From IMG/VR virus record IMGVR_UViG_3300036770_007539, positions 237,008 through 301,007 of that record: 64,000 nt of DNA. One strand, given 5' to 3'. The notes under the pieces were generated by a model, which saw nothing but the letters and a program-made list of their open reading frames with translations, did no database searches and had not been told where the DNA came from. Every line of letters starts with the position of its first letter. The stretch's first letter is position 1. Below, one piece after another: positions 25,695 through 41,479 of this stretch. A program made the translations under genes and the position numbers.

Positions 25695-27785
25695 TCAAGT
25701 TGGAACTATTGCATACTTTTTCCAAGCAACAGGGGACTCACCAGAACAAATAAACACGCCTTGATTAGTGTGAACAATGTCACCAGCTTTTGGACTAACA
25801 GGCAATGAAGCTGTGCCATCTTCTGTTGCAAATGCTTCTGTTGGCGGTGTAAAATTGCTAGTATAGCGAGCTGTGTGGCTAATTCTAAACTCGTCCATGT
25901 AGCCATTAAGGAAAAGGTTAGGTCCGCTTATTCTATCACATCCAATAGTAATGTGAATGCCAGAATTTTTAGGATTAGATGCCGCAGCGCCCCCATATTG
26001 AGTTCCATTCCAATATATTCTTAATTCTCCGCTTGAATTTCTAACTACTGCAATATGATGCCATGTTTCAGCAGTTATTGAGGGAATTGTAACAGGATGA
26101 GTAAATGTGGTAAATCCTCCAGGATGCCAAGCCCAAGTAATTTGAGTTGCGCTATCTATGTAAAGACCATAATCATAAGTAATGTTATGATTATGCTTTC
26201 CTATAATACACATTTGCGTATTTGGAACTGATGGAAAATACAACCATGTCTCTATGGTAAATTCTTTGTTGCCAAGAGCGAATTCATCACTGGGGTTGTA
26301 ATATATAAAAGAATCAGTGCCATTAAAATAACCACTGGAGACTCCAAATTTTTTAATGGCTGTACTTAATTTGGCACCACCTGATACAGTTGGAGTGATT
26401 GGACTAGAAGAGCTGTCAAGAAATGTTGTACTATTATTGTCGCCATTCATATGCAATAAGAGCATGGTCGAAGAGCCCGACACTGGCGTCAATTCCATAT
26501 AAGTATTTGCACTGTTTCCAGCGACTCCTTGCACGCCTTGAGGTCCTTGCGATCCGCCATATTCTCCTTTAAAGCCTTGACTTCCTTGGACTCCTTGGGC
26601 TCCTTGAGTTCCTTGAAAACCTTGATTGCCCTGAGTGCCTTGAGGTCCTTGAACTGCTAAACCTTGAAATCCTTGATTTCCTTGAGATCCTTGATTTCCT
26701 TGGCTTCCTTGGTCCCCTTGTACGCCTTGGGTACCTTGAAGACCCTGCGACCCTTGATGACCTTGCGACCCTTGAAAACCAATAAATCCATCAAAGCCTT
26801 GATGACCTTGAAGTCCTCGGTTTCCTTGAAAGCCTTCATTGCCTTGAAAGCCTTGAGGACCTTGGGGTCCTTGGGGACCTTGAGAACCTATCGGTCCTTG
26901 TGGTCCGGGTATTCCTTGAAAACCTTGAGTGCCTTGATCTCCCGTATGTCCTGGATATCCTTGATATCCTCTGTGTGGTCCAGGATGACCTTGATGACCT
27001 ACAACCGATCCTTGAACGCCTCTGTCTCCGCCATAGTTAGAATAACCTTGAGGACCTTGAACTCCTTGTATCCCTTGAGGACCGCCTGGAATTCCTTGAA
27101 ATCCTTGATGTCCCTGTGAACCCTGCGGACCTTGTGGACCAGGACCACCTTGAGGTCCTTGAGCCCCAGAAGATCCAGAATGTCCCGCAGGACCATTTGA
27201 GCCTTGAGGACCTTGATGACCTAAATGCCCATCCGGTCCTTGAAATCCTTGGACTCCAACAATATCTCCTTGAACTCCACGATTTCCTTGAACGCCTTGA
27301 ATTCCTCGATTCCCATCTAATCCTTGATGCCCTTGAAATCCTTGAAATCCAGTCTCGCCTTTCACGCTTAAGAAAATTGAATATTCTTTGCCTGCAACTA
27401 AACTTCCATCAGAGCCAGAAATATTAGCCGAAACGATAACTGCATATCCGCTTCCGGTAGAATATACTGAAGAAACATCAGTAACTGTTCCTACTCGATA
27501 TTTGCTATCATCATCCAATTGAACCAAGGAAAGTTTTAAATCTTGTGTTTCTAGCAATGATTTAAAACCAGCTAACAATACAGTTACATCATTGGATTCA
27601 TTGTTAATGACGTTAATTGCTAACTGTAAAGAGCTGCCTTGTTGAAAATATTTGGCATATCCATCTAATGGATTAACATCTTCTGCATTGTTGGATGGCG
27701 CTACTTTCCATTTAGAAACGCCTTTTAAATTAGATCCGCTGTTTCCTTGAGAACCTTTTGGAGCTGTGATATTTAAATGAATCAT
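25695..27785 (-). CDS. Collagen-like fibre with LamG domain
   Basis: Long G-X-Q triplet run; C-terminal LamG motifs. Confidence 0.85.
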   Translation of the reverse strand: MIHLNITAPKGSQGNSGSNLKGVSKWKVAPSNNAEDVNPLDGYAKYFQQGSSLQLAINVINNESNDVTVLLAGFKSLLETQDLKLSLVQLDDDSKYRVGTVTDVSSVYSTGSGYAVIVSANISGSDGSLVAGKEYSIFLSVKGETGFQGFQGHQGLDGNRGIQGVQGNRGVQGDIVGVQGFQGPDGHLGHQGPQGSNGPAGHSGSSGAQGPQGGPGPQGPQGSQGHQGFQGIPGGPQGIQGVQGPQGYSNYGGDRGVQGSVVGHQGHPGPHRGYQGYPGHTGDQGTQGFQGIPGPQGPIGSQGPQGPQGPQGFQGNEGFQGNRGLQGHQGFDGFIGFQGSQGHQGSQGLQGTQGVQGDQGSQGNQGSQGNQGFQGLAVQGPQGTQGNQGFQGTQGAQGVQGSQGFKGEYGGSQGPQGVQGVAGNSANTYMELTPVSGSSTMLLLHMNGDNNSTTFLDSSSSPITPTVSGGAKLSTAIKKFGVSSGYFNGTDSFIYYNPSDEFALGNKEFTIETWLYFPSVPNTQMCIIGKHNHNITYDYGLYIDSATQITWAWHPGGFTTFTHPVTIPSITAETWHHIAVVRNSSGELRIYWNGTQYGGAAASNPKNSGIHITIGCDRISGPNLFLNGYMDEFRISHTARYTSNFTPPTEAFATEDGTASLPVSPKAGDIVHTNQGVFICSGESPVAWKKYAIVPT

Positions 27786-27800
27786 ATTTTCTCCAAATTA

Positions 27801-29921
27801 TCAAGGATAGATGGTTACAGGTGTAGATGAATATTTTTTCCAAGTTGCAGGAGATGTTGCTGAACATACATAAAATCCATCTCCAGAGTAAACAATTTGA
27901 CCCAACGTTGGATTAGCTGGCAAGTAAGAAGCAGCATCTGCATTTGCAAATGCACTCGTTGAGGGTGTAAAGTTTCCTGTGTATCTGGCAATTCCTTTAC
28001 TGATACGAATTTCATCAATATATCCATTTACATACCAGCGAGGGGAGTTAGGTCTATCTGCGCCAACTCCTAAAGTAGAAACTGAGTTTGTTGTGGCGGT
28101 CACAAATGAATCACCTGCTTGAGTTCCATTCCAATAAATAGCATATGTTCCAGAGTTTTTTACAACAGCAAAGTGATACCATGCCCCAGTTGTTATTGCT
28201 GGAATTTCTCTGTAATAGAAAGCTCCATTTGTATAAAAATGTACATAATTGGCTCTGTCAATAGAGAATAACCAGTCTGCAGCAATGCCGCTATTATGCT
28301 TAGTAACAACGGTCATTGTAGTAGCATCGGACCAGCCCGCCCCTCCAGCAGCTCCAACTGAACTAAGATTTACCCATCCTTCTATGGTAAAATCACCGCT
28401 GCTCAAATCAAAATCTGAAGAATAAGGTATGTTTAAGTATCCGGAACCATTAAAACTTCCGCTGGCGCTGCCAAATTTACTGGTTGCTGTGCTAATTTTG
28501 GCAGTTCCGTTAGCTGCGGGAATCTTGGTGGTATAAGAGTTATCTGTAAATGTAGTACTTTCATTTGCTCCATCCATATGCAAAAGCAATGAAACTGTTG
28601 AATCACCTAAATCGGTATAACTAGCGTTTACTCCATTTCCAGGTCCAGCTGCCCCTTGGACTCCTTGTGGTCCTTGTGGTCCGGTAGTATCGCCTTGTAC
28701 ACCTTGCGTTCCTTGCGTTCCTTGGAATCCTTGAACGCCTTGAGTTCCCTGTGTTCCTTGCGTTCCTTGAGCGCCTTGCACAGATGAGCCTTGAACGCCT
28801 TGTGCTCCTTGAGTACCTTGAAAGCCCTGCGCTCCTTGAACGCCTTGAGTTCCTTGAGTTCCTTGAAAGCCTTGGGTTCCTTGAACACCTTGCGTTCCTT
28901 GGGCTCCAACGAATCCTGGCTCGCCTTGGAATCCTTGGTTTCCTTGAACGCCTTGAGAGCCTTGAACGCCTTGAGGTCCTGGGTATCCTCTAACTCCAGT
29001 GCTGCCCGTTGGACCAGTAGCTCCTTGAGGTCCGCCATACATGCCTTGATGACCTTGTGGACCTTGTGCTCCTTGCACTCCTTGATAACCTTGAGGTCCA
29101 CCAGCAGCGCCTTGAACGCCTTGGGGTCCTTGAGGTCCTGCATAGCCTTGGGGTCCTTGTGGAGCTTGAGGTCCCATTGCTCCTACAGGACCAGGGAATC
29201 CTTGCGGTCCTTGGGGATTTCCTTGATGACCTTGGGGTCCTTGGACGCCTTGGAATCCTTGAGGACCGCCAAATAATCCTTGAGGACCTTGAGCACCCTG
29301 ACTTCCTTGAACGCCCTGTCCTCCGACTACTCCTTGATAACCTTGAGGACCTTGAGCGCCTTGTACACCTTGGACTCCTTGAGGACCACCGGAGGCGCCT
29401 TGATGACCTTGCAAACCTTGAGGTCCTTGATAACCATCAACTCCTTGTACTCCTTGGCTGCCTTGAACGCCTTGTGCTCCGGTATCACCACGGACATTGA
29501 TTAATATAGAATATTCTTTTCCTTCGGTAAATTCTCCAGAAGCATTCAAAATAAGGCTGGCAATAATGGCGGCATTTCCTGATCCCACAGGATAAGGATA
29601 CACACTGGAAATAGCACTAATTAATCCAGATTTATAAATGCTAGGGTCATCATTTTGAATAACGGTAACGATTAAACCTTCAGATTGTAATAAGGTTTTA
29701 GAGCTAGTTAAGAACTCTAATACGCTGCTAGAACTGCTGTTAATTTCGTTGATTGCAAATTGTAAAGAAGGACCATCTTGGAAAAATTTAAAATATCCAT
29801 CGACAGGATAAACATCTGAATTATTTATAGCGGCAGACATTCGCCATTTAGAGTTGCCCAGTAAATTAGAACCGCTAATTCCTTGAACTCCTTGAGGTCC
29901 GCTGATGTTTAATTGTATCAT
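27801..29921 (-). CDS. Collagen-like fibre with LamG domain
   Basis: Long G-X-Q triplet run; C-terminal LamG motifs. Confidence 0.85.
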   Translation of the reverse strand: MIQLNISGPQGVQGISGSNLLGNSKWRMSAAINNSDVYPVDGYFKFFQDGPSLQFAINEINSSSSSVLEFLTSSKTLLQSEGLIVTVIQNDDPSIYKSGLISAISSVYPYPVGSGNAAIIASLILNASGEFTEGKEYSILINVRGDTGAQGVQGSQGVQGVDGYQGPQGLQGHQGASGGPQGVQGVQGAQGPQGYQGVVGGQGVQGSQGAQGPQGLFGGPQGFQGVQGPQGHQGNPQGPQGFPGPVGAMGPQAPQGPQGYAGPQGPQGVQGAAGGPQGYQGVQGAQGPQGHQGMYGGPQGATGPTGSTGVRGYPGPQGVQGSQGVQGNQGFQGEPGFVGAQGTQGVQGTQGFQGTQGTQGVQGAQGFQGTQGAQGVQGSSVQGAQGTQGTQGTQGVQGFQGTQGTQGVQGDTTGPQGPQGVQGAAGPGNGVNASYTDLGDSTVSLLLHMDGANESTTFTDNSYTTKIPAANGTAKISTATSKFGSASGSFNGSGYLNIPYSSDFDLSSGDFTIEGWVNLSSVGAAGGAGWSDATTMTVVTKHNSGIAADWLFSIDRANYVHFYTNGAFYYREIPAITTGAWYHFAVVKNSGTYAIYWNGTQAGDSFVTATTNSVSTLGVGADRPNSPRWYVNGYIDEIRISKGIARYTGNFTPSTSAFANADAASYLPANPTLGQIVYSGDGFYVCSATSPATWKKYSSTPVTIYP

Positions 29922-30007
29922 CTAATTCTCCAAAACAAGTTAAATAAATAAACTTACAAGTTTATCTTCATCTGCCCATCTTTATTTATATCTGTTTATT
30001 GAATAAT

Positions 30008-30475
30008 TTAATAACTTAACTCCACTTCCAATACCCCCACCGCCCTCAACCTCTCCATAACTAAATTGTCCATCTTGTAACAATGCAACCTCTCCCTGTC
30101 ACTATAATATACCTCCCCACGCCTCATATACAACATCATGTCATCGTAATCTAAATAATAATACTCATCATCCACCACCCTCTTCTCTACCTCTATCCCC
30201 AAATCCCCCAACTTGTTCACCCACTCCAATGCCACATCCCATAACAACATCTCCACCCTCCCCACCATACTTATATCTTTAACCCTCCAAATCTTTCCCA
30301 CTCCCATATCCTCCGACTCCATCAATAAATATCCAATCTCCTTGGTCTTTCCCCGTACACATATCCTCACCTCTCCATCTCTAGAAAAAAGTTTAACCTT
30401 ATACCCGTTGGGCAACTTCACCAAACGGTCTTTGAGCCCGTCTAAGTTGCGTATAAAAGTCATACCTATATGCAA
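30008..30475 (-). CDS. Hypothetical protein (possibly acetyltransferase-like)
   Basis: 155 aa; composition distorted by skew. Confidence 0.45.
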   Translation of the reverse strand: MHIGMTFIRNLDGLKDRLVKLPNGYKVKLFSRDGEVRICVRGKTKEIGYLLMESEDMGVGKIWRVKDISMVGRVEMLLWDVALEWVNKLGDLGIEVEKRVVDDEYYYLDYDDMMLYMRRGEVYYSDRERLHCYKMDNLVMERLRAVGVLEVELSY

Positions 30476-30628
30476 TTTTAATCGTAAATTTTCCCAAACT
30501 TAAATAATTAATTTAATCTTTTTCTCGTCGCCCTAAAAATTAAAATCTTCCGAGTAAACCTTGCCACCCAATATAAATCGATCCAAAATCGGAGTGCTAT
30601 CTTTCCGCTAAATTTAATATCATTTTTT

Positions 30629-31243
30629 TCAATAAATAAATTTTCTAATTTTATTTAATCCAATTCCCATTACCTTGGATAATACCTCCACCTCCGCTAA
30701 ACATTCTCGCTCTTGACCACCCACCAAATCCGCCCCAGACCAATCCTTTAATACATCCTTTAAATCAGGAATGAAAAATCCATAACCCTCCAAATCTTCC
30801 ACCAATAATTCATCCACCCCAATCAATTCCACATCCCCTTCCCCTAAATCCCGAATGTCCCGAATCTCATTATCAATCATATACCCAGCAATCTTTTCCA
30901 CATCCTCCGATGAAAAACAAGGATGATCCATTATCTCTCGGAAAAATCCATACCCCTTATCAAAAAACTCCGCCCGAGATATAAATTCCTCATATAACTC
31001 CTCATCATAATTCATCTTCTCTAAATAATATCTTCTTAAATCTTCCTCCGAACTCATTCCCAGTTCAGGTCCGTTCCATAATACCAAAATCCGAGAATAT
31101 CCAACAGCTACCCCCAATAACTCCCCAATGTCAAATCCAATAAATCCCTCATACTCAGGTTGAACATCCACAATAATTAATTTCCCTCCCCCAACCACCT
31201 GAGCAAACTTATCTACCAACTTCCTTATTTCCTTAACATCCAT
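30629..31243 (-). CDS. Hypothetical protein, cysteine hydrolase/isochorismatase-like N-terminus
   Basis: LIIVDVQPEY; GG..ECL.EV. Confidence 0.5.
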   Translation of the reverse strand: MDVKEIRKLVDKFAQVVGGGKLIIVDVQPEYEGFIGFDIGELLGVAVGYSRILVLWNGPELGMSSEEDLRRYYLEKMNYDEELYEEFISRAEFFDKGYGFFREIMDHPCFSSEDVEKIAGYMIDNEIRDIRDLGEGDVELIGVDELLVEDLEGYGFFIPDLKDVLKDWSGADLVGGQERECLAEVEVLSKVMGIGLNKIRKFIY

Positions 31244-31283
31244 ACCTCAATATCCTACCATTACCATATTTTCATATATTACC

Positions 31284-31667
31284 ATGATCCCCCTCAATTA
31301 TCAACTCCAAGCCCTAGGCGCCATTAATCAAGTCTTCCTCAAAATCCTCCCCCACTCTCCCCATGACCCCACCCCAGCCTGGATCTACCTCACCCTCCAT
31401 CCCAATAACTCCTGGATCCTCACCGCCTCCTCCTCCAATCTCCCTCTCCTAACCCAACTCTTCGAAATTGCCCTGGAACTTCCCTCCACCATCAATTCCA
31501 ACGGTATCTCGCCCTCCAATTTCATCCCTCCTTGGGAAATCCCCCTATGGGAATCCCTCCAAGAAAGATCCGATCTCTCCCATCACCCCTTCAAAAAAGA
31601 TTCAACCCACTTATTCCAAGATTTAAAAAATAATGACCGAATCTGCCTTAAAGATTATCACTTCTGA
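31284..31667 (+). CDS. Hypothetical protein
   Basis: 127 aa, fills the gap between minus-strand genes; Pro/Leu/Ser-rich because of skew. Confidence 0.4.
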   Translation: MIPLNYQLQALGAINQVFLKILPHSPHDPTPAWIYLTLHPNNSWILTASSSNLPLLTQLFEIALELPSTINSNGISPSNFIPPWEIPLWESLQERSDLSHHPFKKDSTHLFQDLKNNDRICLKDYHF

Positions 31668-31682
31668 ATCCTCATCCCAACC

Positions 31683-32306
31683 TCATCCCAACCTCTTCTT
31701 CAATCCACCAATCAATCCCCCCAAGGTCCGATCCACCCATACCGTCGTCCCACAATACGTATCCTCAAAATGTATCTCCTCGTAATTCCCAGGTACCTCC
31801 ACTACCTCATACCCATATGTCCCCCTCTTCACCCTCCTACCATCCCTCGTACTGTCATGCCCCACAATTACCCCAGCCCGACCCATTACCAGATTCACAA
31901 TATCTCCCCGATTGCAAATCCCCGGATCCACAAAAATTAAATCCCACCCACCCCCTACCCCATCCACGATCTCCCGTAACTCACCCATATGCCCCCGCTC
32001 CTCAATCGGATATCCCCCAACCCTCGCCTCCTCATGCGCCCGACGTATCCCCTCCCCAGCTTCCACATAAACACCCCTCCAGTTCCTACCAACATACCTC
32101 TCCCTGCTCCTCTCATACCACCCCCTATTAAATTCCCCCAAGGAAATCTCCACAGACATTACCTCCCCACTATGATCCAATAAATACTCCGTCCCATCCC
32201 CTATCCCAAATTCCAATAACCGTCCCACCTTATATTCCCTAAACACTATCTCCAGATAATGATGCCAGTCCTGCGCTACCCCAAATCCATAATCCCTCTT
32301 TTTCAT
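31683..32306 (-). CDS. Class I SAM methyltransferase-like protein
   Basis: LLEFGIG, VMSVE, WDLIFVD, VIVGHD. Confidence 0.65.
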   Translation of the reverse strand: MKKRDYGFGVAQDWHHYLEIVFREYKVGRLLEFGIGDGTEYLLDHSGEVMSVEISLGEFNRGWYERSRERYVGRNWRGVYVEAGEGIRRAHEEARVGGYPIEERGHMGELREIVDGVGGGWDLIFVDPGICNRGDIVNLVMGRAGVIVGHDSTRDGRRVKRGTYGYEVVEVPGNYEEIHFEDTYCGTTVWVDRTLGGLIGGLKKRLG

Positions 32307-32823
32307 TCATTTCTCCTAAAAGTTATTTTCTATCTCTTATATCTCTTAATTACTATGTTTCTAAAATGACCATATGTGACCATATAATAATTTGTTCCAA
32401 GAAATTTTTATCAAAAAGTCCTGAATTAAAGGATCCACTTTTTACCACTTAAAACCACTTTTTACCATTTTTAACTAATTAAAATCAACCCCAAAGAAAT
32501 TATCTTATAAATAAAAGATAACACAAGGAAATGTAATGGTGGGAAGTAGTGGGAAAAGAAAAAGATGTCAAAAATAGAAAATGAAAAGACTGACGGATAG
32601 AAAAGACATAGAGAGAAGTGGGATAGATGGGATAGAAGCGGGAACAGAGAGAAGAGGAATTGGATAGAAAGGGAAACAAAGAAGATAGAAGATGGATAGG
32701 AAATGGATAGAAGTGGGAACAGGTGGGTGATAGAATACGGATAGAAGGTGAATAGAATACAGATAGAAGAGGGAACAGGCGGGGTAGAAAGGGGATGGAA
32801 GGGGAGAGGATATGGATAGAAAG

Positions 32824-32987
32824 GGATAGAATACGGATGGAATATGGATGGAATATGGGTAGAATATGGGTAGAATACGGATAGAATACGGATAGGAGTG
32901 GGATAGAATACGGATAGGAGTGGGATAGAAGTGGGATGGAATACGGATAGAAAGGAATGGAAGTGGGATAGGAGTGGGATAGAAAGA
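32824..32987 (+). repeat. About 15 tandem copies of an 11-bp unit GGATAGAATAC/GGATAGGAGTG
   Basis: Units read directly; degenerate GGATAG copies extend left to about 32590. Confidence 0.9.
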
Positions 32988-33116
32988 GGAGAGGATTGGT
33001 GGGAGTTGGTGCCAGAAGTAAATAAGAGCCATAAGTACGTTTACCCTGCTCGGGCGTCCGCTTCGACACGCCTGTCATCCCCCTCCATCGCTACCTGCCC
33101 CCTTTTGCCCCATTTC

Positions 33117-33258
33117 TTGACAATCTCTGGTTTGTTGCTATATATATGGTGTGACGACGAGACGAGACGAAACGAAACGCATCGCGAAACGATGCGAAAC
33201 GGAACGAATCGGCTCACGAACGACGCACGCTTGACAAGTGCCGGATCGGCGCTAGGAT
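33117..33258 (+). promoter_or_regulatory. Tandem sigma70-like promoters, unit 1
   Basis: TTGACA 33117-N16-TATATA; TTGACA 33231-N16-TAGGAT. Confidence 0.75.
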
Positions 33259-33340
33259 AGTGGTGTGGCGGATCGTCACGCCGTTGCCGGACGGATTCCG
33301 GTATCTCCCATGGGGGCAACGCCCCCGGAAAGGATCTCCC

Positions 33341-33634
33341 GTGTCAAAGGGAGCGATCCGTAGGAGAGCCCGTCGCTACAGGGAGCACGGGCTCTCCTTC
33401 ATCGTGCGCGTTCGGCTGGCGAAAGCCGCCGAACGCGCGATGAGCGACGAGGGCGGTCTCCGCGCCCTCGGCGCGGAGATGATCACGCATCGCACGTACA
33501 CAATGTGTACGTGCGATGCGTGCGACGAGTGGATCGCCGAGTGGAAGCTCGGCGATTTCACCATCAAAACCGACAGCGGATACATCGTATCCGCTGTCAA
33601 AAACCAACCCGTGCTCCCCTCTTCGGAGGGTTGA
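33341..33634 (+). CDS. Hypothetical protein
   Basis: AAAGGA RBS and GTG start; stop lies inside a repeat hairpin. Confidence 0.55.
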   Translation: MSKGAIRRRARRYREHGLSFIVRVRLAKAAERAMSDEGGLRALGAEMITHRTYTMCTCDACDEWIAEWKLGDFTIKTDSGYIVSAVKNQPVLPSSEG

Positions 33635-33642
33635 GCGCGGGT

Positions 33643-33701
33643 TGCGTCGCCAAGGTCCGCTTTCGAGCGGAGGGGGTTCGATTCCCCCGCGACGCACTAC
33701 C
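33643..33701 (+). ncRNA. Anticodon-less tRNA-like element 1
   Basis: TGCGTCGC/GCGACGCA stem; T-arm GGGGG-TTCGATT-CCCCC. Confidence 0.7.
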
Positions 33702-33761
33702 GCGCCAGACGGATTCTGGTGTTTCTCGAATGGGGGACATATGTCCCCGGAGGATAAGAGC

Positions 33762-34496
33762 ATGATGAAAAAGTACAATATTGCCGCGAAGTCCGCTCCC
33801 GCTCCCGCCCCCGCCGCCGCCCCCGTCGCCGCCGCCGTCCTCGCCGCCCCGGAGAACCCGGGCGTGTGGTTCGACCTCCACATCACGCGATTCAAAGAGG
33901 TGGGTTGCTCGGCTCGGGGCAACTTCGCGATGGTGCCGTCGGGCACCGTCGCGATCCTAGGGGCGAGCGACTACGAAGTCGGAGACGCCCTTTTGTCATA
34001 CGACTTCGATCGGGAGGGGCACACGCCCCTCAGCACCGCCCTCTCGCTCCGCATCTGGGCGGACCACACGTGGTGGGGAAAGGAATACCTCAAAGGCTGG
34101 GGCGCCGCCGCCCGCCGAAAGGCGGAGCGGATCTTGAACGACCTCGCGACGCCCGGTGGTAGCGACGAGGAGGACTACCCGGCATGGGTAGCTGCTGCAA
34201 AGCAGTATACTCTCTACTGCTTCCCCCCGTTCGACTTGTATCAGCGTATTCTTGTTGTGGAGTCTGACAGGTGCGGGTTCATAACCGCCCGCGTCGACGA
34301 GCAGCATCCGGATGAGAGCAAGCCCATGCACGGGGGCTGGCTGGTGCTTGCCCTTGCTCGAACGCAAGACCTGCCATCCAAGACCCGCCAAGCATGGGAG
34401 ATGTGCTCCCCGCTGTGGAGGGCGAGAGCCCTCGAATACATCCGTATGGTTGGATTTAAGGTTACGCCAGGAAGTTTCCTGGCTGATCTGGTCTGA
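33762..34496 (+). CDS. Hypothetical protein with an Ala/Pro-rich N-terminal linker
   Basis: RBS and ATG after a structured leader; 244 aa. Confidence 0.65.
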   Translation: MMKKYNIAAKSAPAPAPAAAPVAAAVLAAPENPGVWFDLHITRFKEVGCSARGNFAMVPSGTVAILGASDYEVGDALLSYDFDREGHTPLSTALSLRIWADHTWWGKEYLKGWGAAARRKAERILNDLATPGGSDEEDYPAWVAAAKQYTLYCFPPFDLYQRILVVESDRCGFITARVDEQHPDESKPMHGGWLVLALARTQDLPSKTRQAWEMCSPLWRARALEYIRMVGFKVTPGSFLADLV

Positions 34497-34538
34497 CCTG
34501 TCTCCCCCGCGCTCCCCTTCGGGGTCGAGCGCGGGGGC

Positions 34539-34611
34539 GTGCATCGCTTTGGAGTCTCGTTCCCCCGCAAGGGGGAACGAGGAGGGGGTTCGATTCCCTC
34601 ACGATGCACCA
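34539..34611 (+). ncRNA. Anticodon-less tRNA-like element 2
   Basis: GTGCATCG/CGATGCAC stem; TTCGATT T-loop; ends ACCA. Confidence 0.75.
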
Positions 34612-34898
34612 TGAGGAACATTCGTTCCTCCCGTTGTCGGACGGATTCCGGCTTCTCGTTGGGGCGCTCGCGCCGCCGAGCGGGAGGCGTTCCGCGCTTC
34701 CCTTCGCGGCGATGAGCGCCGTGAGGGGAATCGCGGTCGCCGCCTCGGCGACCGCGACGTCATCTGACCCATCTGCCCCTGGCTCCCCTCGCAAGAGGGT
34801 CGAGCCGGGGGCATCACCCCGAGGAACATTCGTTCCTCACCCTGACCGGAGGGTGTCCGGTGCTTCCAAGGGGATGAATGTCCCCGGAAAGGATTCTG

Positions 34899-35111
34899 AT
34901 GACCATCGGCGAGGCGGTCGACCGCCTCGTCTCGGAGGGGTACAACCCCGACCGAGACGACCTCCCCGCATGGGCAAAGGGGAAGGGGTTCCGACAGGAA
35001 CTCCGGACCCTCCCCTGCGGGGAGGAGTGCTGCGGGCAAGGGTACGCCCTTGTCCGCGGCAACGACGACGAGGAGGAGGAGCGGTTCATTCCGCTTCCTC
35101 CTCTCTTCTGA
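34899..35111 (+). CDS. Hypothetical protein with CGEECCG motif (paralog of 40796..41086)
   Basis: AAAGGA RBS; shared motif. Confidence 0.6.
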   Translation: MTIGEAVDRLVSEGYNPDRDDLPAWAKGKGFRQELRTLPCGEECCGQGYALVRGNDDEEEERFIPLPPLF

Positions 35112-35163
35112 GACTCGCCCCTGGCTCCCCTCGCAAGAGGGTCGAGCCGGGGGCATTTTTTCT

Positions 35164-35408
35164 GCGCTACATTGGCTATTTGGAGATCTAGTGTATTCGA
35201 AGCCGTACTATAAGAAATATTCTTCTTTCAATGACTTCTTTTTCTTTTCTCTTTTCCAAGAAAGAGGGGGGAGGGGGAGTCAATGAAAAAAAATCTTCTT
35301 TACAAGAGGCTTTACCTTTCTTTTTAGAGATCATGTTTCTTCGAAGCCAGTGCAGGTCTGACATTTCTAATCAATCGTTCGTTTTATTACTCTCTTGATA
35401 GCTAGGGC
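35164..35408. repeat. AT-rich spacer element 1
   Basis: GCGCTACATTGGCT ... AGCCAGTGCAG ... GCTAGGGC. Confidence 0.75.
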
Positions 35409-35433
35409 ATATTGTCGTGTTTGCGTGCGTAAC

Positions 35434-35535
35434 TTGACAAGTGATGGATCGTTGCTAGTATGTAGGGTGTGAGATGAACGCAAACGAGACAACGCAAGCG
35501 CGCTTGATTGACAAGCGGTGCAGCGGTGCTAGTAT
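35434..35535 (+). promoter_or_regulatory. Tandem sigma70-like promoters, unit 2
   Basis: TTGACA 35434-N16-TAGTAT; TTGACA 35508-N16-TAGTAT. Confidence 0.8.
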
Positions 35536-35819
35536 GCGGTCATCGAAGATTCGACGCAGCATAGGGGCGTCGAGACGAGCCGCCGTTAGCGGTGCTCTAA
35601 CAGAGCAGTCACGGGCTAGCCCGTGAATCGAGCCGGGCGATTCCCGGTGGTGAGCAAGGGATCTTGCGGCTTTGCCGGTTGAAGCCGCAAGATCCCTTGC
35701 CCTTGATAATCTGTGGAAGCTGTGCATAATGGTGTGCATGGCTTTGGGGGTCAATCCCCGCTTTGCCGGAGAGTGTCCGGTAACGTCCAAGGGGACGCAT
35801 GTCCCCGGAAAGGACTTTC

Positions 35820-36185
35820 TTGAACCTCCAAAAGAGGATCGAGGAAGTGGACCAGGCGCTCGCGCGTCTGGTCCAGAGCGAGATCGTCGTCGCGCAGGTA
35901 GTGCTCGACGATCTGATCTACCTCCACCGCCCCGCCAGCCGTCAGCACGTCTTGCGACAGCGGGCGGATCGCCTACTCCAGGATCGGGACTGGCGAGTCC
36001 AGCCGATCCTGGAGCGGCGCGAGCGACTGGAGCGCCTTCGCGGGCTGCTCGTCGCTCGCGCCGCACGCGCCGCAGGTCGCGACACCTGCGGCTACTGTGG
36101 GTGGGACAACGGTCCCATCGACCCCGCCACAGGTCGCGGTCTCAGCCGTCAAGGCTGGGATTGCGGCTATTGCGGGGGGAACTAA
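35820..36185 (+). CDS. Coiled-coil protein with a C-terminal Zn finger
   Basis: CGYCGWD..CGYC; TTG start after AAAGGA. Confidence 0.6.
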   Translation: MNLQKRIEEVDQALARLVQSEIVVAQVVLDDLIYLHRPASRQHVLRQRADRLLQDRDWRVQPILERRERLERLRGLLVARAARAAGRDTCGYCGWDNGPIDPATGRGLSRQGWDCGYCGGN

Positions 36186-36243
36186 CCCTTCTCTCCGCAT
36201 CGTTTCCTCCGCGCTCCCCTTCGGGGTCGAGCGCGGGGGAGGC

Positions 36244-36312
36244 TGCATCTTCTCGCTTGGAGGCGAGCGCCCCTTGCGGGGCGGACGGGTTCGATTCCCG
36301 TAGGATGTACCA
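36244..36312 (+). ncRNA. Anticodon-less tRNA-like element 3 (four-arm)
   Basis: TGCATCTT/AGGATGTA; GG-containing D-like loop; 4-nt-loop middle arm; ACGGG-TTCGATT-CCCGT; ends ACCA. Confidence 0.75.
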
Positions 36313-36380
36313 TGAGAGCTTGTCTCTCCCGCGTCGGACGGATTCCGATTGTCTGCGATCGAGAAAGGAGGACTGTCCAC

Positions 36381-36722
36381 ATGGCACAGTACCTCGGAAA
36401 CGCCTTCTCGCTCGGTATGCTCGATTGTCTCACGGCGGAAACGCCTGTGAGCGTCGAGTGTGCCGCCTTCACGCTCGACGAGGCACGCGCCTACGTCGAG
36501 CACAACCGCCCGACCTCGACGGTCGGGCACCTCGACACGGCGGAACTCTTCTCCGCCATGTTGGGGTCTTCCGTGGAGATGCGCCGCGTCTCCACGTCTC
36601 TGATCGGCGGGGATGAGATCCTCGTCGGTCAATACAACGGTCCGCGTCTTCCGGAGGGGGCGAAGAGCCTCCCCGAGGGCGCCAAGGTCCGCTGGATTCT
36701 GGCGCGCATCGTCGCGCGCTGA
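36381..36722 (+). CDS. acrIII-1: DUF1874 / AcrIII-1-like viral ring nuclease (anti-CRISPR type III)
   Basis: YLGNAFS, TLDEAR, STVGHLDTAELFSAMLG, EMRR, GDEIL, RLPEG match the STIV B116 / SIRV1 gp29 / YddF pattern. Confidence 0.8.
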   Translation: MAQYLGNAFSLGMLDCLTAETPVSVECAAFTLDEARAYVEHNRPTSTVGHLDTAELFSAMLGSSVEMRRVSTSLIGGDEILVGQYNGPRLPEGAKSLPEGAKVRWILARIVAR

Positions 36723-36881
36723 GGGTCCACACTCGCCCCTGGTTCCCCGCAAGGGTTGAGCCGGGGGCGTCCCTTCGGGGGAATATCTTTGGAAACTGCC
36801 TGCAAGTTCTGGCTTGTGGGCAGCTTCGAGGGATTGTCCCTTGACCGTAGCTAGGCGGACACCTAGCATCAGGAGGGTCAC

Positions 36882-37106
36882 ATGACTCTTCAAGAAGCAA
36901 TCCGAGAGGTCCGAGACCTTTCGGGAATCCCGGAGGAGCAGCTGCTCCGGGATTGGAACGAGAAGAAGTGCCAGTCTATGGACTGGCACTTCGACACCGA
37001 GACGGTCGAAGACCGTCTCGGAGAGTTGGTGACGTACTTCTACGTGGAAATCATCCCCGAAGGGGATGGTTTCCGCGTCAGGTCTCGAAAAGAGACCTGG
37101 CGATGA
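36882..37106 (+). CDS. Hypothetical protein
   Basis: AGGAGG RBS; 74 aa. Confidence 0.6.
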   Translation: MTLQEAIREVRDLSGIPEEQLLRDWNEKKCQSMDWHFDTETVEDRLGELVTYFYVEIIPEGDGFRVRSRKETWR

Positions 37107-37413
37107 GCCTCGCCCCCGCGTTCCCCTTCGGGGTCGAGCGCGGGGGCACTCGCGGGTTGAGCCGAAAGGTTCCCCGCTCTGACTTCAGGTGGCTCCGACG
37201 CTGATAACGGCGCGGGTTTGATACCCGCTGGAGGACACAGAACATCCTCCTAGCGAAAAGCCGCAGCGGGGAGTGCTTCCGATTCGGGTTACGGTGCAGG
37301 TTTGAGTCCTGCTCTCCCGCGTCACGGGGGTCGGTTGAGACGCCGCCGAACGGAAGCAACGCCTGATTGCAACAACAATAAAGGGGGCGCATATCCCCCG
37401 GAAAGGATATGGT

Positions 37414-38127
37414 TTGAGGACCATCTGCATCGGCGACATCCACGGATGTATCGCCGAGTTTCAAAAGCTCGTGGAGGTTCTCGCGCCCACGAGCGAGGAT
37501 CGGATCGTCCTGTTGGGCGATCTGATCGACAAGGGTCCAAAAAGCGCAGAAGTGGTTCGCTTCGCCCGCGAGATCGGAGCGACCACCATTCAGGGCAACC
37601 ACGAGGAGAAGGCTCTTCGATGGTTTGCCCACGAGAAGACTCGGATCGCCACGGGGAAGGCGAATCCGATGAGCCCTCCCGAGCACAAGGTTCGGGAGTG
37701 GAACACGATCCCCGCCGATGATCGGGAGTGGCTGGCAGCTGCTCCCGTTTACACGGATCTCGGCTCCGGGTTCCTCGCCGTTCACGGCGGGATGCTGCCC
37801 GGGGTCAAGCCACAAGATCACAAGAAGGGAATCCCCCTCCGCCTGAGGTTCGTCAACGACAAGGGCAAGTTTCTGCCCCTCGACGACGACCACGGCGATC
37901 CTGAGGGAGGTATCCCCTGGTACCAGGTCTACGATGGGGAGCACTCCCTGGTGGTGGGTCACACGGTTCACAGCCTGGAGTATCCCCGAATGGATCGTAT
38001 CGGGGATCGGGTGATCTGGCACCTGGACACGGGTTGCGTTCATGGTGGTCGCCTGACGGCGCTCATCCTGGAGACGCAAGAAGTCGTCCAGGTACAAGCG
38101 TCCCAAGTCTACAAGGCGCGGGACTGA
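37414..38127 (+). CDS. Calcineurin-like metallophosphoesterase (ApaH/PrpE/Pnkp-phosphatase-like)
   Basis: GDIHG, GDLIDKG, GNHE, HGG, GHT, LDTGCVHGGRLTA. Confidence 0.9.
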   Translation: MRTICIGDIHGCIAEFQKLVEVLAPTSEDRIVLLGDLIDKGPKSAEVVRFAREIGATTIQGNHEEKALRWFAHEKTRIATGKANPMSPPEHKVREWNTIPADDREWLAAAPVYTDLGSGFLAVHGGMLPGVKPQDHKKGIPLRLRFVNDKGKFLPLDDDHGDPEGGIPWYQVYDGEHSLVVGHTVHSLEYPRMDRIGDRVIWHLDTGCVHGGRLTALILETQEVVQVQASQVYKARD

Positions 38128-38447
38128 GGCGATTGGATTGTTCCTGCGTTCCCCGCAAGGGTTGAGCGCAGGAACAAGTTTCAAGAAGAAAGGAAGAGGA
38201 AGTGGAAATCTGTATGGTTTCGGGTTTTCCGACTCCTTGCGGGTGTTTTGCCTGCCAGGAGTCGGTGGAGCAGGCGCGCGGTGGCAACTGCCACTGCAGC
38301 GCCTGCTGCAAGGTTCGCTTCGGAAACGAAGCGAACGAAGCGAACGAAGGTTGCCGATGGGAGGCGGTTCGACCGCCTCGTCCTCGGCAGTAGGAATCGC
38401 CCCATCGCGTTCCCCCTTGCGGGGTCGAGCGCGATGGGGATTTTTCT

Positions 38448-38683
38448 GCGCTACATTGGCTATATCTGAGATCTTGACATATTCGTTGCTGATGCAGAAT
38501 CTTTTTTTCTTCAATGATTTTTCTTTTTTCTTTTCTACGGGAGGGAGAAACAAGAGAATCAATGAGCTAAGATATTCTTCAAAAGAAACGACTTGTCATT
38601 TATCTTTTACGAGATCAAACACATTCGGAGCCGATGCAGCTCTGATTCGTTTATCAAACGTTTGTTTAGTTCTCAGCTAGGGC
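38448..38683. repeat. AT-rich spacer element 2
   Basis: GCGCTACATTGGCT ... AGCCGATGCAGC ... GCTAGGGC. Confidence 0.75.
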
Positions 38684-38717
38684 TAGGGTGTTCGTTTCTG
38701 CGTGAATCTGTGCAGCC

Positions 38718-38873
38718 TTGACAACGGGCGGATCGATGCTAGATTGTATGGTGTGAGAGAGAGCAACGAATCGAAACAAGCGAGCGAATGAGCGAACGCA
38801 TAAGCCGCGACGGTAGCGGTTAGCGGGTAGCGGATAGCGCGTAGCTTGACACGGTTGGATTCGCTGCTAGGCT
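38718..38873 (+). promoter_or_regulatory. Tandem sigma70-like promoters, unit 3
   Basis: TTGACA 38718-N16-TAGATT; TTGACA 38846-N16-TAGGCT. Confidence 0.75.
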
Positions 38874-38894
38874 TTCTCATAGAAGGGAGGTTAC

Positions 38895-39200
38895 ATGCAA
38901 CAGATTTGTGGAAGATGCTCCGGAAGGGAGAGTCATTCCTGTTGCCCTGATTGCAGGGGAAAGGGCTGGCTTTCCCGCGCGGACGTTCGCGTTCTTCGCT
39001 TGAAGCAGGCGGCATTCTGTTTGCTTCACGAGAAGGCGCGCGAGCATTGGCTCACGCTGAGTGAGCCGCGTCCGCGCCAGGAGTCCTTCGTGCTGGACTA
39101 CGTGTTCAAGCACGAGCAATGGTACTTCGAGACGATCGTCTCGAAGTTTACCCCGGAGCAGAAGCGCACGCTTCTGCGTCGGTTCCCCTGCAATCCCTGA
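38895..39200 (+). CDS. Hypothetical protein with a DnaJ-type Zn motif
   Basis: CGRCSGR..CPDCRGKG. Confidence 0.6.
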   Translation: MQQICGRCSGRESHSCCPDCRGKGWLSRADVRVLRLKQAAFCLLHEKAREHWLTLSEPRPRQESFVLDYVFKHEQWYFETIVSKFTPEQKRTLLRRFPCNP

Positions 39201-39307
39201 ACCGGGTAGAGCGAGCCCTCGCAAGGGGGCTCGTTCCCTACAACCGGATCTGGATCGTGATTGATCTAGGTTCGATTATAGGGATTACCCCTATTGAAAG
39301 GAGGAGC

Positions 39308-39445
39308 ATGAAGTTTCTGGAAAAGCTCTCGAATCGATTGCCCTACGTCGTTCAAGAGTCCCCGCTCGACCCGATCACTTGGATCTTTGCGGTCCCTTTG
39401 CTGGTCCTTTACGGGATTGGCTACATTGTCGGGGGATTGACGTGA
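39308..39445 (+). CDS. Small membrane peptide
   Basis: GAGGAG RBS; hydrophobic C-terminal half. Confidence 0.5.
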   Translation: MKFLEKLSNRLPYVVQESPLDPITWIFAVPLLVLYGIGYIVGGLT

Positions 39446-39615
39446 AAGACGACTTCCTCGACGATATCATCGCAAAGATCGACTCTCTTCGCATCGAGGA
39501 GTGCGAGAGCGGGGCGATCATTCGCAAGCCGGAGGTGAGCGACTTCAAGCGTCCCTCCCTTCTACCCAAGATCATCAACATGCGATCCTTGCTGGTCGAT
39601 TCTAGCAAGTCGTGA
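39442..39615 (+). CDS. Hypothetical protein
   Basis: GTG start overlapping the upstream stop. Confidence 0.45.
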   Translation: MKDDFLDDIIAKIDSLRIEECESGAIIRKPEVSDFKRPSLLPKIINMRSLLVDSSKS

Positions 39616-39621
39616 ACGGCA

Positions 39622-39687
39622 GCATCCCCTCGTGTGGTTGCGAGCACCTGAAAAGGTGGACAGGTTCGATTCCTGTGGGATGCACTA
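39622..39687 (+). ncRNA. tRNA-like element 4 (compact cloverleaf)
   Basis: GCATCCC/GGGATGC; CTCG-TGTGGTTG-CGAG; CACC-TGAAAA-GGTG; ACAGG-TTCGATT-CCTGT; ends ACTA. Confidence 0.75.
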
Positions 39688-39747
39688 CCGCGTCGGACGG
39701 ATTCCGATATCTCTTGAATGGGGGCAAAGCTCCCGGAAGGATTCTTC

Positions 39748-40131
39748 ATGTCGAATGATGACCGTATCGAGCGATTTGCTCGCTCGATCGCCTTGAAGCT
39801 GTACAACGATTCATGGTCCGAGAACGACCTCAAGTACTTTCTCGTACCCCGCCCGCCGCCTGCGTGGGTGGTTTGCAATGTTGCAGCTTCCAATGCGTTC
39901 ATTAGAGGCGGCGAACCTCTGGATCGAGAGGGCATGATCGCTCTTGCTGGTGATTGTGCAAGGAAAATCTTTGCAATCTTCCAGGAGGAGATGTTCATAG
40001 ATTCGGAGGTGACTGTTCCATCTCCCCTCTACCAGCAGGAAGATATCGAGCAGGCGATCTTGACCATCCCTGCGAGGGTGGACGAGGCTCTCGAAGAAGC
40101 GAAGAAACCCCCGATTCGTGCCATCGCATGA
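39748..40131 (+). CDS. Hypothetical protein
   Basis: RBS after a structured leader. Confidence 0.6.
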   Translation: MSNDDRIERFARSIALKLYNDSWSENDLKYFLVPRPPPAWVVCNVAASNAFIRGGEPLDREGMIALAGDCARKIFAIFQEEMFIDSEVTVPSPLYQQEDIEQAILTIPARVDEALEEAKKPPIRAIA

Positions 40132-40293
40132 GTTTGGTGTGGTATCGTCCCTGGCTCCCCTCTTCGGAGGGTCAAGCCGGAGGCACCCCTTCGGGTGAAT
40201 ATCTTTGGAGCCTGCTTGCAAGTTTCTTGTAGGCAGGTTCGAGGGATTATCTCTCGACCGATACCGGACGGATATCCGGCAAAGGGAGACATC

Positions 40294-40629
40294 ATGTACG
40301 ATGATGATGTGCTCGAAGCTCTGCTGGTGCTCTTGACTGAGCATCAGCGGTTGGAGAGGCTTCTGAACGCTCAGAAGTCTCGTGGGATCGCCTTCGAATG
40401 CCTTCTCCGCCAGCAGAAAGCTGTCGAGAAGGCTCTCTTCTCTCGCACGATGCGGGGGAAGATTCGCCGCCAGCTCCGCGACGCCGCCGACAAGGCGGCA
40501 GTCGAGAAGATGCACGCAGCCGCCGCCAAGAAGCTGCGAGAGGCAGAAGCTGAGAAGCGTTGGGAGGCGGAGGAGCGAATGAAGCAAACGTGGCGAGAGC
40601 TTGGCGCGGTCGCCGCCAAATTTCCGTAG
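40294..40629 (+). CDS. Coiled-coil hypothetical protein
   Basis: GGGAG RBS; Glu/Lys/Arg/Ala-rich. Confidence 0.6.
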   Translation: MYDDDVLEALLVLLTEHQRLERLLNAQKSRGIAFECLLRQQKAVEKALFSRTMRGKIRRQLRDAADKAAVEKMHAAAAKKLREAEAEKRWEAEERMKQTWRELGAVAAKFP

Positions 40630-40795
40630 TGTTCTAGATCGAATCCGTCCCATCGCGTTCCCCTTCGGGGTGAGCGCGATGGGGCGACCCTTCATGGGAA
40701 TATCTTTGGAAGCTACCTGCAAGTTTCTTGCAGGTAGCTTCGAGGGATTGTCCCTTGATTGAAACCAGGCAAATACCTGGTCTTTTGGAGGCATC

Positions 40796-41444: not shown

Positions 41445-41479
41445 ATAAAGCGCGTTAGATCGTGAATATAGGCGTGCGC

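What the first reader, a model, noticed from the sequence alone, without database searches (positions are those of the whole stretch)
32590..32990. 11-bp, helically phased tandem array at the skew switch
Seen: about 15 units of GGATAGAATAC / GGATGGAATAT / GGATAGGAGTG at 32824-32987, degenerate GGATAG copies upstream, and an AT-rich stretch at ~32310-32510 with ACCACT repeats. The period is not a multiple of 3 and the overlapping ORFs are low-complexity artefacts. Inference: iteron-like or terminase/packaging binding sites next to an unwinding element.
Basis: partly seen in the sequence, partly recalled or inferred. Interest (0 to 1): 0.6.

Follow-up and report, generated by a model that had tools for sequence, protein, structure and literature searches.

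The report
Purine-rich repeat tract at phage strand-switch
The 11-bp repeat array is real, non-coding and unique in a 301-kb jumbo phage. It sits where an extreme DNA strand bias flips sign. Related phages keep a purine-rich, cytosine-free tract at the same junction but not the repeat sequence or its spacing, so it looks like a composition-dependent cis element (possibly origin-associated) rather than classical iterons.

Summary
An 11-bp tandem array (core 32729-32990; 15 clean units at 32824-32987) lies inside a 490-bp tract (32520-33008) that is 81% purine and 4% C. It has no copy elsewhere in the 301-kb phage contig. It is non-coding and matches no Rfam family. Contigs from four samples of one study cover its parts without differences, and two of them bridge its right end into the high-GC block.

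Four related metagenomic phages keep the same architecture. C-poor genes run leftward from an AT-rich control region. A 340-580 nt purine-rich C-poor tract follows, then a conserved boundary motif, then a high-GC block of promoter-driven cassettes. The repeat unit and period are not conserved: 11 nt again in L008 with a different unit, 12/18 in L009, none in L003/L006. Two 99.5%-identical strains differ by 28-nt and 1-nt indels in the tract.

The strand bias flips at 32519/32520 and does not depend on gene orientation.

Best reading (about 0.35): a composition-dependent, G-cluster/R-loop-prone DNA element of an origin-like strand-switch locus, with the array a recent slippage expansion. Sequence-specific iterons, terminus-flanking repeats, a sponge RNA and a functionless spacer remain open. 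The "unwinding element" is mainly the leftward promoter with phased T-tracts.

The parts
32729..32990 (+). Core 11-bp tandem array (about 24 units; the cleanest 15 at 32824-32987), G/A-rich on the + strand.
   Evidence: TRF period 11, 23.6 copies. Copies in register. Lag-11 z = 9.4. Unit list.
32520..32728 (+). Degenerate 5' part of the purine-rich, C-poor tract, with scattered GGATAG/GGGAAC units. It contains GGGAAGTAGTGGGA (32541), which is shared with L003.
   Evidence: Composition A 0.44-0.54, C 0.04-0.05. Sequence. Motif unique in the genome. Alignment to L003.
33009..33048 (+). Conserved boundary motif ending the tract: GTGCCAGAAGT, 8 nt, GCCATAAGT, 3 nt, TTTACCCTG. It is present in all four relatives with 16-19 bp repeat spacing.
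   Evidence: (unique in the genome). Contigs of runs X2 and X4 start at 33048 and one X2 contig ends at 33020.
32307..32519 (.). AT-rich control region.
- Leftward sigma70-like promoter (TTGATA-16-AATTAT, 32414->32387, minus strand).
- Conserved blocks 32365-32390 and 32394-32424.
- 10-bp-phased CCACTTTTTA x4 at 32435-32473, inverted relative to L003/L008.
- Palindrome at 32500-32521.
29950..32306 (-). Left arm of the asymmetric domain (+ strand G 6-8%).
- 31683-32306(-): 207 aa, Methyltransf_24-like.
- 31284-31667(+): 127 aa, on the C-rich strand.
- 30629-31243(-): 204 aa.
- 30008-30475(-): 155 aa.
   Evidence: Purifying selection on the 127-aa frame. Homologues and synteny. Atlas hint.
33117..33258 (+). 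The first two rightward promoters of the high-GC cassette block: TTGACA..TATATA at 33117-33147 and TTGACA-16-TAGGAT at 33231-33258.
   Evidence: Promoter family D4/D8. Scan. Sequence.

Best explanation
The array is the most regular, recently expanded part of a 490-bp non-coding DNA tract. The tract's conserved property is composition, not sequence. On the strand that runs 5'->3' away from the AT-rich control region it is about 80% purine, rich in G clusters (a GGA or GGG every 9-11 nt) and almost free of C.

Together with the oppositely polarised, equally C-poor gene arm on the other side, it forms a strand-switch locus unique to this phage clade. It lies between a strong leftward promoter and a battery of rightward early-type promoters.

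I infer that the locus is a site of a strand-specific DNA transaction, most likely replication initiation. Negative supercoiling between the divergent promoters and the AT-rich, bent control region would favour opening. The G-cluster, C-free strand would favour a persistent displaced strand (R-loop or G-quadruplex loop), in the manner of the T4 oriF/oriG, ColE1 or mitochondrial origins.

The 11-bp units arose by replication slippage of a GGGATAG-type motif and are tolerated because they keep that composition.

Shown: existence, uniqueness, non-coding status, conserved position and composition, fast turnover, and a DNA-level bias independent of gene orientation. Inferred: origin function, R-loop formation and any transcription of the tract.
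For: - Unique in 301 kb, and exactly at the only extreme skew flip.
- The same junction architecture occurs in L003, L006, L008 and L009. Tracts are 340-580 nt, A+G about 80%, C 2-7%, with 30-44 GGA each.
- A script that applies QmRLFS-style R-loop criteria flags only three intervals in the genome: the array (+ 32620-33034), the C-poor gene arm on the opposite strand (- 30961-32207), and one short site in the GC block.
- The asymmetry is a DNA-strand property. The 127-aa gene on the C-rich strand is under purifying selection (46 differences, codon positions 11/7/28; 26 synonymous against 13 non-synonymous codons) and has G3 5% and C3 54%.
- The control region is AT-rich, has 10-bp-phased T-tracts and conserved motifs, and lies between divergent promoters.
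- L008 carries 20 GATC in 300 bp just beyond the boundary motif.
- Precedent: three of T4's more active origins (oriE, oriF, oriG) lie near transcription-divergence and compositional-shift points. oriE has evenly spaced 12-nt repeats. oriF and oriG work through R-loops (PMC3016281).
Against: - No promoter reading into the tract is convincingly predicted in the window. Only weak, non-homologous candidates exist in L003 and L009.
- No RNA data exist; all holder runs are DNA.
- No initiator gene is adjacent, and no DnaA homologue is in the contig.
- The phage is not T4-like in its replication genes. It has DnaE, DnaB-like helicase and topoisomerase IA, and no gp59 or T4 RNase H.
- R-loop propensity is a direct consequence of composition, so one search is not independent evidence.
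- Polarised substitutions show no C->T excess, so a long-lived single-stranded state is not evident as a mutational signature.
- The tract's rapid turnover is equally compatible with no function.
Confidence: 0.35

Rival explanations
1. A functionless, slippage-prone spacer. The tract is low-complexity DNA inside a domain of extreme strand bias, and the 11-bp array is a neutral microsatellite-like expansion.
For: - Unit sequence and period differ between relatives.
- L003 and L006 are 99.5% identical overall, but their differences concentrate in two places: a 28-nt indel, a 1-nt indel and 5 substitutions inside the tract, and about 8 mismatches in the high-GC side at L003 901-1100.
- The central units are near-identical 22-bp duplicates.
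- No structure, no Rfam hit and no ORF.
Against: - A tract of 340-580 nt with the same polarity, purine content and sharp conserved boundaries persists in five genomes whose flanking protein is only 72-86% identical. A neutral spacer in a 94%-coding phage would be expected to shrink or drift in composition.
- An 11-nt period arises in two lineages with related cores.
Confidence: 0.25
2. True iterons: an array of sequence-specific sites for a phage protein (initiator, regulator, or partition adaptor as at R1 parC or TubZRC tubC) that polymerises along abutting 11-bp sites.
For: - Abutting 11-bp units in strict register.
- A shared core of the type GGRA-A/T-A/C-AG in the window, L008 and L003 units.
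- Unique locus.
- The phage encodes a tubulin-family protein.
- T4 oriE has 12-nt repeats.
Against: - There is no regular spacing in L003/L006 and a different period in L009.
- Indels of 1 and 28 nt are tolerated.
- No DNA-binding, ParR/TubR-like or Rep-like gene is recognised beside the array.
- The tubulin gene is 65 kb away and has no repeats near it.
- No ParM or ParA families were found.
Confidence: 0.2
3. Repeats flanking a genome terminus or concatemer junction. The conserved boundary motif (33009-33048) would be a terminase recognition or cutting site, and the array would correspond to the short repeat arrays that flank the T7 terminal repeat (recalled from memory, not checked here). 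The promoter battery to the right would be the first-entering early region.
For: - The boundary motif is the best-conserved non-coding element of the junction.
- All strong early-type promoters point away from it.
- Contigs of two runs begin at 33048, and depth roughly doubles to the right in X2 (5.5 against 12.1).
- A GpA-type large terminase is present.
Against: - Contigs from X1 and X3 run straight through the boundary.
- Contig depths are contig means and are confounded by GC content and by shared strains.
- There are no end repeats in the contig and no second copy of the block.
- The terminase gene is 170 kb away.
Confidence: 0.1
4. A transcribed, unstructured purine-rich non-coding RNA that titrates an RNA-binding factor. 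Candidates are a CsrA/RsmA-type GGA binder, Shine-Dalgarno-like decoys for 30S subunits, or sigma70 through the repeated -10-like TAGAAT on the non-template strand.
For: - 44 GGA in 486 nt, and 30-39 in relatives.
- The RNA is predicted to be essentially unstructured (-38.5 kcal/mol for 546 nt, z = +0.76).
- TAGAAT occurs 7 times against 0.4 expected.
- Promoter-like sites reading into the tract lie at its start in L009 (TTGAAG-17-TAGAAT) and inside its first ~70 nt in L003.
Against: - No match to CsrB/RsmY/RsmZ or any other Rfam family at E <= 1.
- The GGA motifs are not presented in hairpin loops.
- There is no intrinsic terminator at the end and no good promoter in the window.
- No RNA run holds the locus.
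- The C-poverty is a DNA-strand property, not an RNA-sense property.
Confidence: 0.1

Closest known systems
Phage T4 oriE (12-nt evenly spaced direct repeats, the 'iterons')
   Same: A cluster of short, evenly spaced direct repeats in a phage genome. It lies near a point where transcription diverges and strand composition shifts, close to early-type promoters. The role of the repeats is still unproven in T4 too (PMC3016281).
   Different: This phage is not T4-like in its replication genes. The units here are 11 bp, about 24 copies, strongly purine-rich, and not conserved in sequence or period among relatives. No RepEB-like gene was identified.
R-loop origins (T4 oriF/oriG, ColE1, mitochondrial CSB) and R-loop-forming sequences such as immunoglobulin switch regions
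   Same: A G-cluster-rich, C-poor strand next to promoters and an AT-rich region. It meets G-cluster plus 40%-or-more-G zone criteria. It is tandemly repetitive like switch regions.
   Different: No promoter has been shown to transcribe the tract, and no RNase H or UvsW-type context was identified. T4 DUEs are A+T-rich, not G-rich. The comparison with switch regions and the QmRLFS rules rests on my own knowledge.
Type II/III partition centromeres (R1 parC 11-bp iterons; TubZRC tubC 12-bp iterons)
   Same: Directly abutting 11-12-bp direct repeats next to a promoter region. The phage has a tubulin homologue.
   Different: Centromere arrays lie immediately upstream of their adaptor and motor genes. 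Here the tubulin gene is 65 kb away with no array and no adaptor is recognised. The properties of parC and tubC are recalled from memory.
CsrB/RsmZ-type protein-sponge RNAs
   Same: High density of GGA motifs in a roughly 500-nt non-coding stretch.
   Different: No Rfam match, no hairpin presentation, no promoter or terminator, and no evidence of transcription.

Membership tests
Iteron-type replication origin (plasmid/phage; T4 oriE-like) | Tandem or evenly spaced direct repeats of one conserved unit | tested here: met
   11-bp units, about 24 copies, lag-11 z = 9.4.
Iteron-type replication origin (plasmid/phage; T4 oriE-like) | Repeats conserved (unit and spacing) at the syntenic site of close relatives | tested here: not met
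   A tract is present in 4 of 4 relatives, but the unit and period differ: none in L003/L006, 12/18 in L009, 11 with another unit in L008. A 28-nt indel separates 99.5%-identical strains.
Iteron-type replication origin (plasmid/phage; T4 oriE-like) | Cognate initiator gene adjacent, or iterons inside it | tested here: not met
   Neighbouring proteins have no Rep, wHTH or DnaA-like hits. The 207-aa protein is Methyltransf_24-like.
Iteron-type replication origin (plasmid/phage; T4 oriE-like) | Adjacent AT-rich unwinding region | tested here: inconclusive
   The 76% A+T region 32307-32519 adjoins the tract. Much of it is a conserved leftward promoter with phased T-tracts. Melting was not tested.
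Iteron-type replication origin (plasmid/phage; T4 oriE-like) | Replication actually initiates there | not testable with these tools
   Needs marker-frequency analysis, 2D gels or an origin-cloning assay.
R-loop-primed origin | Promoter directing transcription into the zone | tested here: inconclusive
   No site in the window passes the scan. Weak sites at or just inside the tract start in L003 and L009. No RNA runs.
R-loop-primed origin | G-rich, C-poor non-template strand able to hold an RNA:DNA hybrid | tested here: met
   G 39-40%, C 3-4%. It is one of only three G-cluster plus G-rich intervals in 301 kb.
CsrB/RsmZ sponge RNA | Covariance-model match; GGA in hairpin loops; own promoter and terminator | tested here: not met
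   No Rfam hit at E <= 1. The fold is no better than shuffles. No terminator-like site on the + strand at the tract end (the only nearby site, 33196->33178, is on the minus strand), and no promoter-like site on the + strand reading into the tract.
Partition centromere (parC/tubC) | Array immediately upstream of adaptor and cytomotive ATPase/GTPase genes | tested here: not met
   The tubulin homologue lies at genome 204.7-206.0 kb with no repeats nearby. No ParM or ParA.
Terminase pac/cos site or terminal-repeat flank | Physical DNA ends or a coverage step at the site | tested here: inconclusive
   Contig breaks at 33020 and 33048 and about 2x depth to the right in X2, but contigs from X1 and X3 bridge the site. 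Only contigs were available, no read ends.
Protein-coding repeat | Open frame conserved in relatives; indels in multiples of 3 | tested here: not met
   27 TAG codons on the + strand. The minus-strand ORFs are broken by 28-nt and 1-nt indels between near-identical strains. The period is 11.

The most novel reading that the evidence does not exclude
The array is the visible tip of a selection-maintained, strand-polar 'C-free island'. On both sides of one control region, the DNA strand running 5'->3' outward is kept nearly devoid of cytosine over 0.5 kb and 2.5 kb, and over more than 7 kb in relatives. This holds whatever the orientation of the genes inside, and newly inserted genes show weaker bias.

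This would mark a previously undescribed kind of phage cis-locus. It could be an origin or entry region whose displaced or lagging-template strand must lack C, either to hold a G-loop or R-loop, to lack primase or nuclease target sites, or to escape a C-directed attack on single-stranded DNA.
Probability: 0.15. Interest if true: 0.85.

Novelty: new variant of a known kind. Interest (0 to 1): 0.55.

Why it matters
Replication origins and other cis-acting sites of uncultured jumbo phages are almost unknown. This locus offers a sharply delimited candidate of 0.8 kb with conserved flanking motifs, which can be cloned and tested.

The surrounding asymmetry is more unusual. GC skew reaches 0.7-0.8, flips at one point, is independent of gene orientation, and shows no deamination signature. 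Ordinary replication or transcription bias does not explain it. If selection maintains it, that points to a new constraint on phage DNA strands.

The case also shows that conserved composition with free-running repeat units can mimic iterons in single-genome scans.

Tried and rejected
- **Alternative genetic code.** ORF coverage of the rest of the genome is 94% under table 11, and reassigning stops adds little. The standard code was kept and no other code was used.
- **Known RNA family.** None in the tract at E <= 1.
- **Array, promoter and boundary motifs elsewhere.**
  - No hits in IMG/VR and no DNA match in INPHARED phages.
  - The single GTDB hit (L022, a Sphingobacteriaceae MAG) is a chance match inside ordinary bacterial genes.
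- **Chimeric assembly.** Rejected. Independent contigs from X1 and X3 cross the junction, and five separate assemblies show the same architecture.
- **T4-like classification.** No gp23, gp59 or T4 RNase H. The cyanomyovirus hits concern one virion protein at 31% identity.
- **'C-poor mRNA' ideas** (escape from C-analogue chain terminators or from C-specific RNases). Weakened, because a conserved gene on the opposite strand carries the complementary bias and residual C shows no sequence context.
- **Cytosine deamination as the driver.** Polarised changes give C->T 3, C->A 3 and C->G 4. The numbers are small.
- **Sigma54 promoter in the boundary motif (TGGCAC).** The -12 GC element is absent (by eye).
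- **DnaA boxes.** The CCAC repeats match at most 7 of 9 positions of the relaxed consensus (by eye).
- **Inverted-duplication origin of the tract.** Only weak complementary matches, as expected from composition.
- **Function of neighbouring proteins.** Pfam, PHROGs and the Atlas give nothing beyond a Methyltransf_24 hint.
- **RNA evidence.** No RNA run holds the locus.

Full report
**What is there.** The window is the last 64 kb of a 301,007-bp IMG/VR virus contig (linear, CheckV 71%) with about 33% G+C overall. The reported array exists.
- TRF finds period 11, 23.6 copies at 32729-32984, with a 22-bp higher-order row.
- Copies sit in strict 11-bp register.
- Fifteen clean units occupy 32824-32987.
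- Lag-11 self-identity is 0.55, z = 9.4 against shuffles.

The array is the regular core of a longer tract, 32520-33008. On the + strand this tract is 42% A, 39% G, 16% T and 4% C. Its motifs and those of the flanking control region occur nowhere else in the 301 kb.

**Assembly.** An X1 contig runs through 31000-34536 with no differences. An X2 contig spans the whole tract to 33020, and an X3 contig bridges 32886-33198. An X4 contig covers only 32418-32694, the start of the tract. All four are samples of one study. The junction with the high-GC DNA to the right is therefore not an assembly chimera.

**Not coding, not a known RNA.**
- The + strand carries 27 TAG codons.
- The two long minus-strand ORFs lie on a strand too poor in A and G to make stops.
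- Near-identical relatives differ there by 28-nt and 1-nt indels.
- The genome uses the standard code. Stop reassignments were tallied only as a check, and none was adopted.
- No Rfam family matches the tract at E <= 1.
- Either strand folds no better than shuffled sequence.

**Surroundings.**
- *Left.* Minus-strand genes of 207, 204 and 155 aa, then two collagen plus LamG fibre-like genes.
- *Right.* From about 33.05 to 52.3 kb lies a 52-62% G+C block. It consists of eight or nine cassettes. Each has a conserved sigma70-like promoter, a structured leader, one + strand gene, a terminator and an AT-rich spacer.
- *The phage.* A jumbo myovirus with DnaE-type polymerase, DnaB-like helicase, topoisomerase IA, GpA-type terminase, an intein, ribonucleotide reductase and a tubulin homologue. 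It lacks T4 gp23, gp59 and RNase H.

**The skew switch.** From 30008 to 32519 the + strand has 6-8% G, in intergenic stretches as well. From 32520 to 32990 it has 3-5% C. No other part of the contig approaches this.

The bias is a property of the DNA strand, not of mRNA. The 127-aa ORF 31284-31667 lies on the C-rich strand. It is conserved under purifying selection (window against L003: 46 differences at codon positions 11/7/28; 26 synonymous against 13 non-synonymous codons). Its third positions are 54% C and 5% G.

Residual C has no preferred sequence context. Polarised substitutions show no C->T excess (small numbers). Deamination of an exposed strand is therefore not evident as the cause.

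**Relatives.** Proteins 62-86% identical to the 207-aa protein led to contigs L003-L009. The four that reach the junction are L003, L006, L008 and L009. All show the same order:
1. C-poor genes
2. AT-rich control region
3. a 340-580-nt purine-rich, C-poor tract
4. a boundary motif (two GTGCCAT-A/T-A-G/A-T repeats 16-19 bp apart, then TTTACCCT)
5. high-GC DNA with the same promoter type

Homologues at 24-43% identity sit in normally composed DNA without any tract.

Position, polarity, composition, GGA density and sharp boundaries are conserved. Sequence and period are not.
- L008 has its own 11-nt unit (GGGGACAGTAA; lag-11 z = 8.7).
- L009 has 12/18-nt units.
- L003 and L006 have no regular period.
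- L003 and L006 are 99.5% identical overall, yet the tract holds a 28-nt indel, a 1-nt indel and 5 substitutions.

Gene content of the C-poor arm also varies. Inserted genes show weaker skew.

**The AT-rich stretch.** It contains a leftward promoter (TTGATA-16-AATTAT, 32414->32387). Its -35 and -10 regions are the best-conserved blocks of the region. Upstream of it lie four 10-bp-phased CCACTTTTTA repeats, which is a bent-DNA/UP-like arrangement. The element is inverted in the window relative to L003 and L008. No convincing rightward promoter into the tract is predicted in the window. Weak ones appear in L003 and L009.

**Interpretation.** The conservation pattern argues against classical iterons and for a composition-dependent element.

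The most coherent reading is an origin-like strand-switch locus: an AT-rich bent region between strong divergent promoters, flanked by strands rich in G clusters and free of C. By simple G-cluster criteria, these are among only three R-loop-prone intervals in the genome, the third being a short site in the GC block. The 20 GATC sites in 300 bp next to the boundary in L008 add an origin-like trait.

T4 offers the nearest documented parallel. Its active origins lie near transcription-divergence and skew-shift points, oriE has evenly spaced 12-nt repeats of unproven role, and oriF/oriG use R-loops (PMC3016281).

I give this reading 0.35. The rivals are:
- a functionless slippage-prone spacer (0.25)
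- true protein-binding iterons (0.2)
- terminus or concatemer-junction repeats, with the boundary motif as the terminase site (0.1; contig breaks at 33020 and 33048 and about 2x depth to the right in X2)
- a purine-rich sponge RNA (0.1)

**Limits.** No RNA run holds the locus. Only contigs could be laid on it, not reads, so transcript ends, DNA ends and true depth are unknown. Neighbouring proteins are orphans, apart from a Methyltransf_24-like hint. The host is unknown. The QmRLFS-style rules, the CsrA, parC/tubC and T7 comparisons rest on my own knowledge.

No broken toxin gene, animal virus or spliced model was involved.

Noticed in passing
window 33050-52300: A 52-62% G+C block inside a 33% G+C phage. 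It holds eight or nine cassettes. Each starts with a conserved sigma70-like promoter (TTGACAAG..GATCGTTGCTAGTAT..GGGTGTGAGA at 33231, 35434, 35508, 38718, 41480, 45523, 49235, 51625, and probably 33117). This is followed by an ACGA-rich leader, GC hairpins, one + strand gene, an intrinsic terminator and an AT-rich spacer. Examples of the genes: a metallophosphoesterase-like ORF at 37471-38127 and a P-loop ORF at 42063-42530. All repeats are confined to the block.
   Followed up: partly
window 33643-33699, 34539-34611, 36244-36312, 39622-39687, 48401-48461 (+): Five tRNA-like elements. Each has an acceptor stem, a T arm (GGTTCGATTCC) and a ..CACCA or CACTA 3' end, but a tetraloop hairpin where the anticodon loop should be. 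ARAGORN does not call them. They give weak Rfam hits to tRNA-Sec and mascRNA (24-27 bits). Fold z-scores are -3.2 to -5.8.
   Followed up: partly
window 29950-32519; L003 1902-8854: A gene arm whose one DNA strand has only 6-9% C whatever the gene orientation. The skew is weaker in genes present in only some relatives (L003 795-aa and 811-aa genes 0.3-0.5; L008/L009 opposite-strand gene about 0.2). The cause is unknown, and there is no C->T signature.
   Followed up: partly
window 33020-33048 and rightward: Logan contigs of runs X2 and X4 begin exactly at 33048, and one X2 contig ends at 33020. Contig depth is about 2x higher right of the boundary in X2 (5.5 against 12.1) and about 2.6x higher from 34508 in X1. 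Possible causes are a terminal repeat, GC bias, or sequence shared by several strains.
   Followed up: no
L008 2851-3150; L009 about 3520-3660: L008 has 20 GATC sites (mostly TGGATC) in 300 bp just beyond the boundary motif. L009 has a (CCTAAC)x7 hexamer array in its control region. Neither is present in the window.
   Followed up: no
window 32435-32473 against L003 about 1700-1740 and L008: The ACCACTTTTTACC / AAAGTGGATC element of the control region is in opposite orientation in the window and in the relatives. This suggests a small inversion between conserved flanks.
   Followed up: no
window 32731-32904: The repeat unit contains TAGAAT, a -10-like hexamer of the same TAGnAT type as the block's promoters. 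It occurs 7 times against 0.4 expected from shuffles.
   Followed up: partly
window 25695-29921 (-): Two paralogous proteins of about 700 aa with collagen triple-helix repeats and a concanavalin/LamG domain, followed by a third LamG protein (24632-25561). They are probably tail fibres.
   Followed up: no
window 55026-55099, 57081-57165, 59131-59336: tRNA-Lys(UUU), tRNA-Leu(CAA) and a group I intron (59.9 bits), in a stretch (52-64 kb) with only 54% ORF coverage.
   Followed up: no
genome 204.7-206.0 kb, 209.3-210.7 kb, 78.6-82.2 kb, 109.8-114.4 kb: A tubulin-family gene (64.5 bits) with no repeat array nearby, a DnaB-like helicase, a DnaE-type Pol III alpha, and an intein with a LAGLIDADG domain inside a 1533-aa ORF.
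   Followed up: partly
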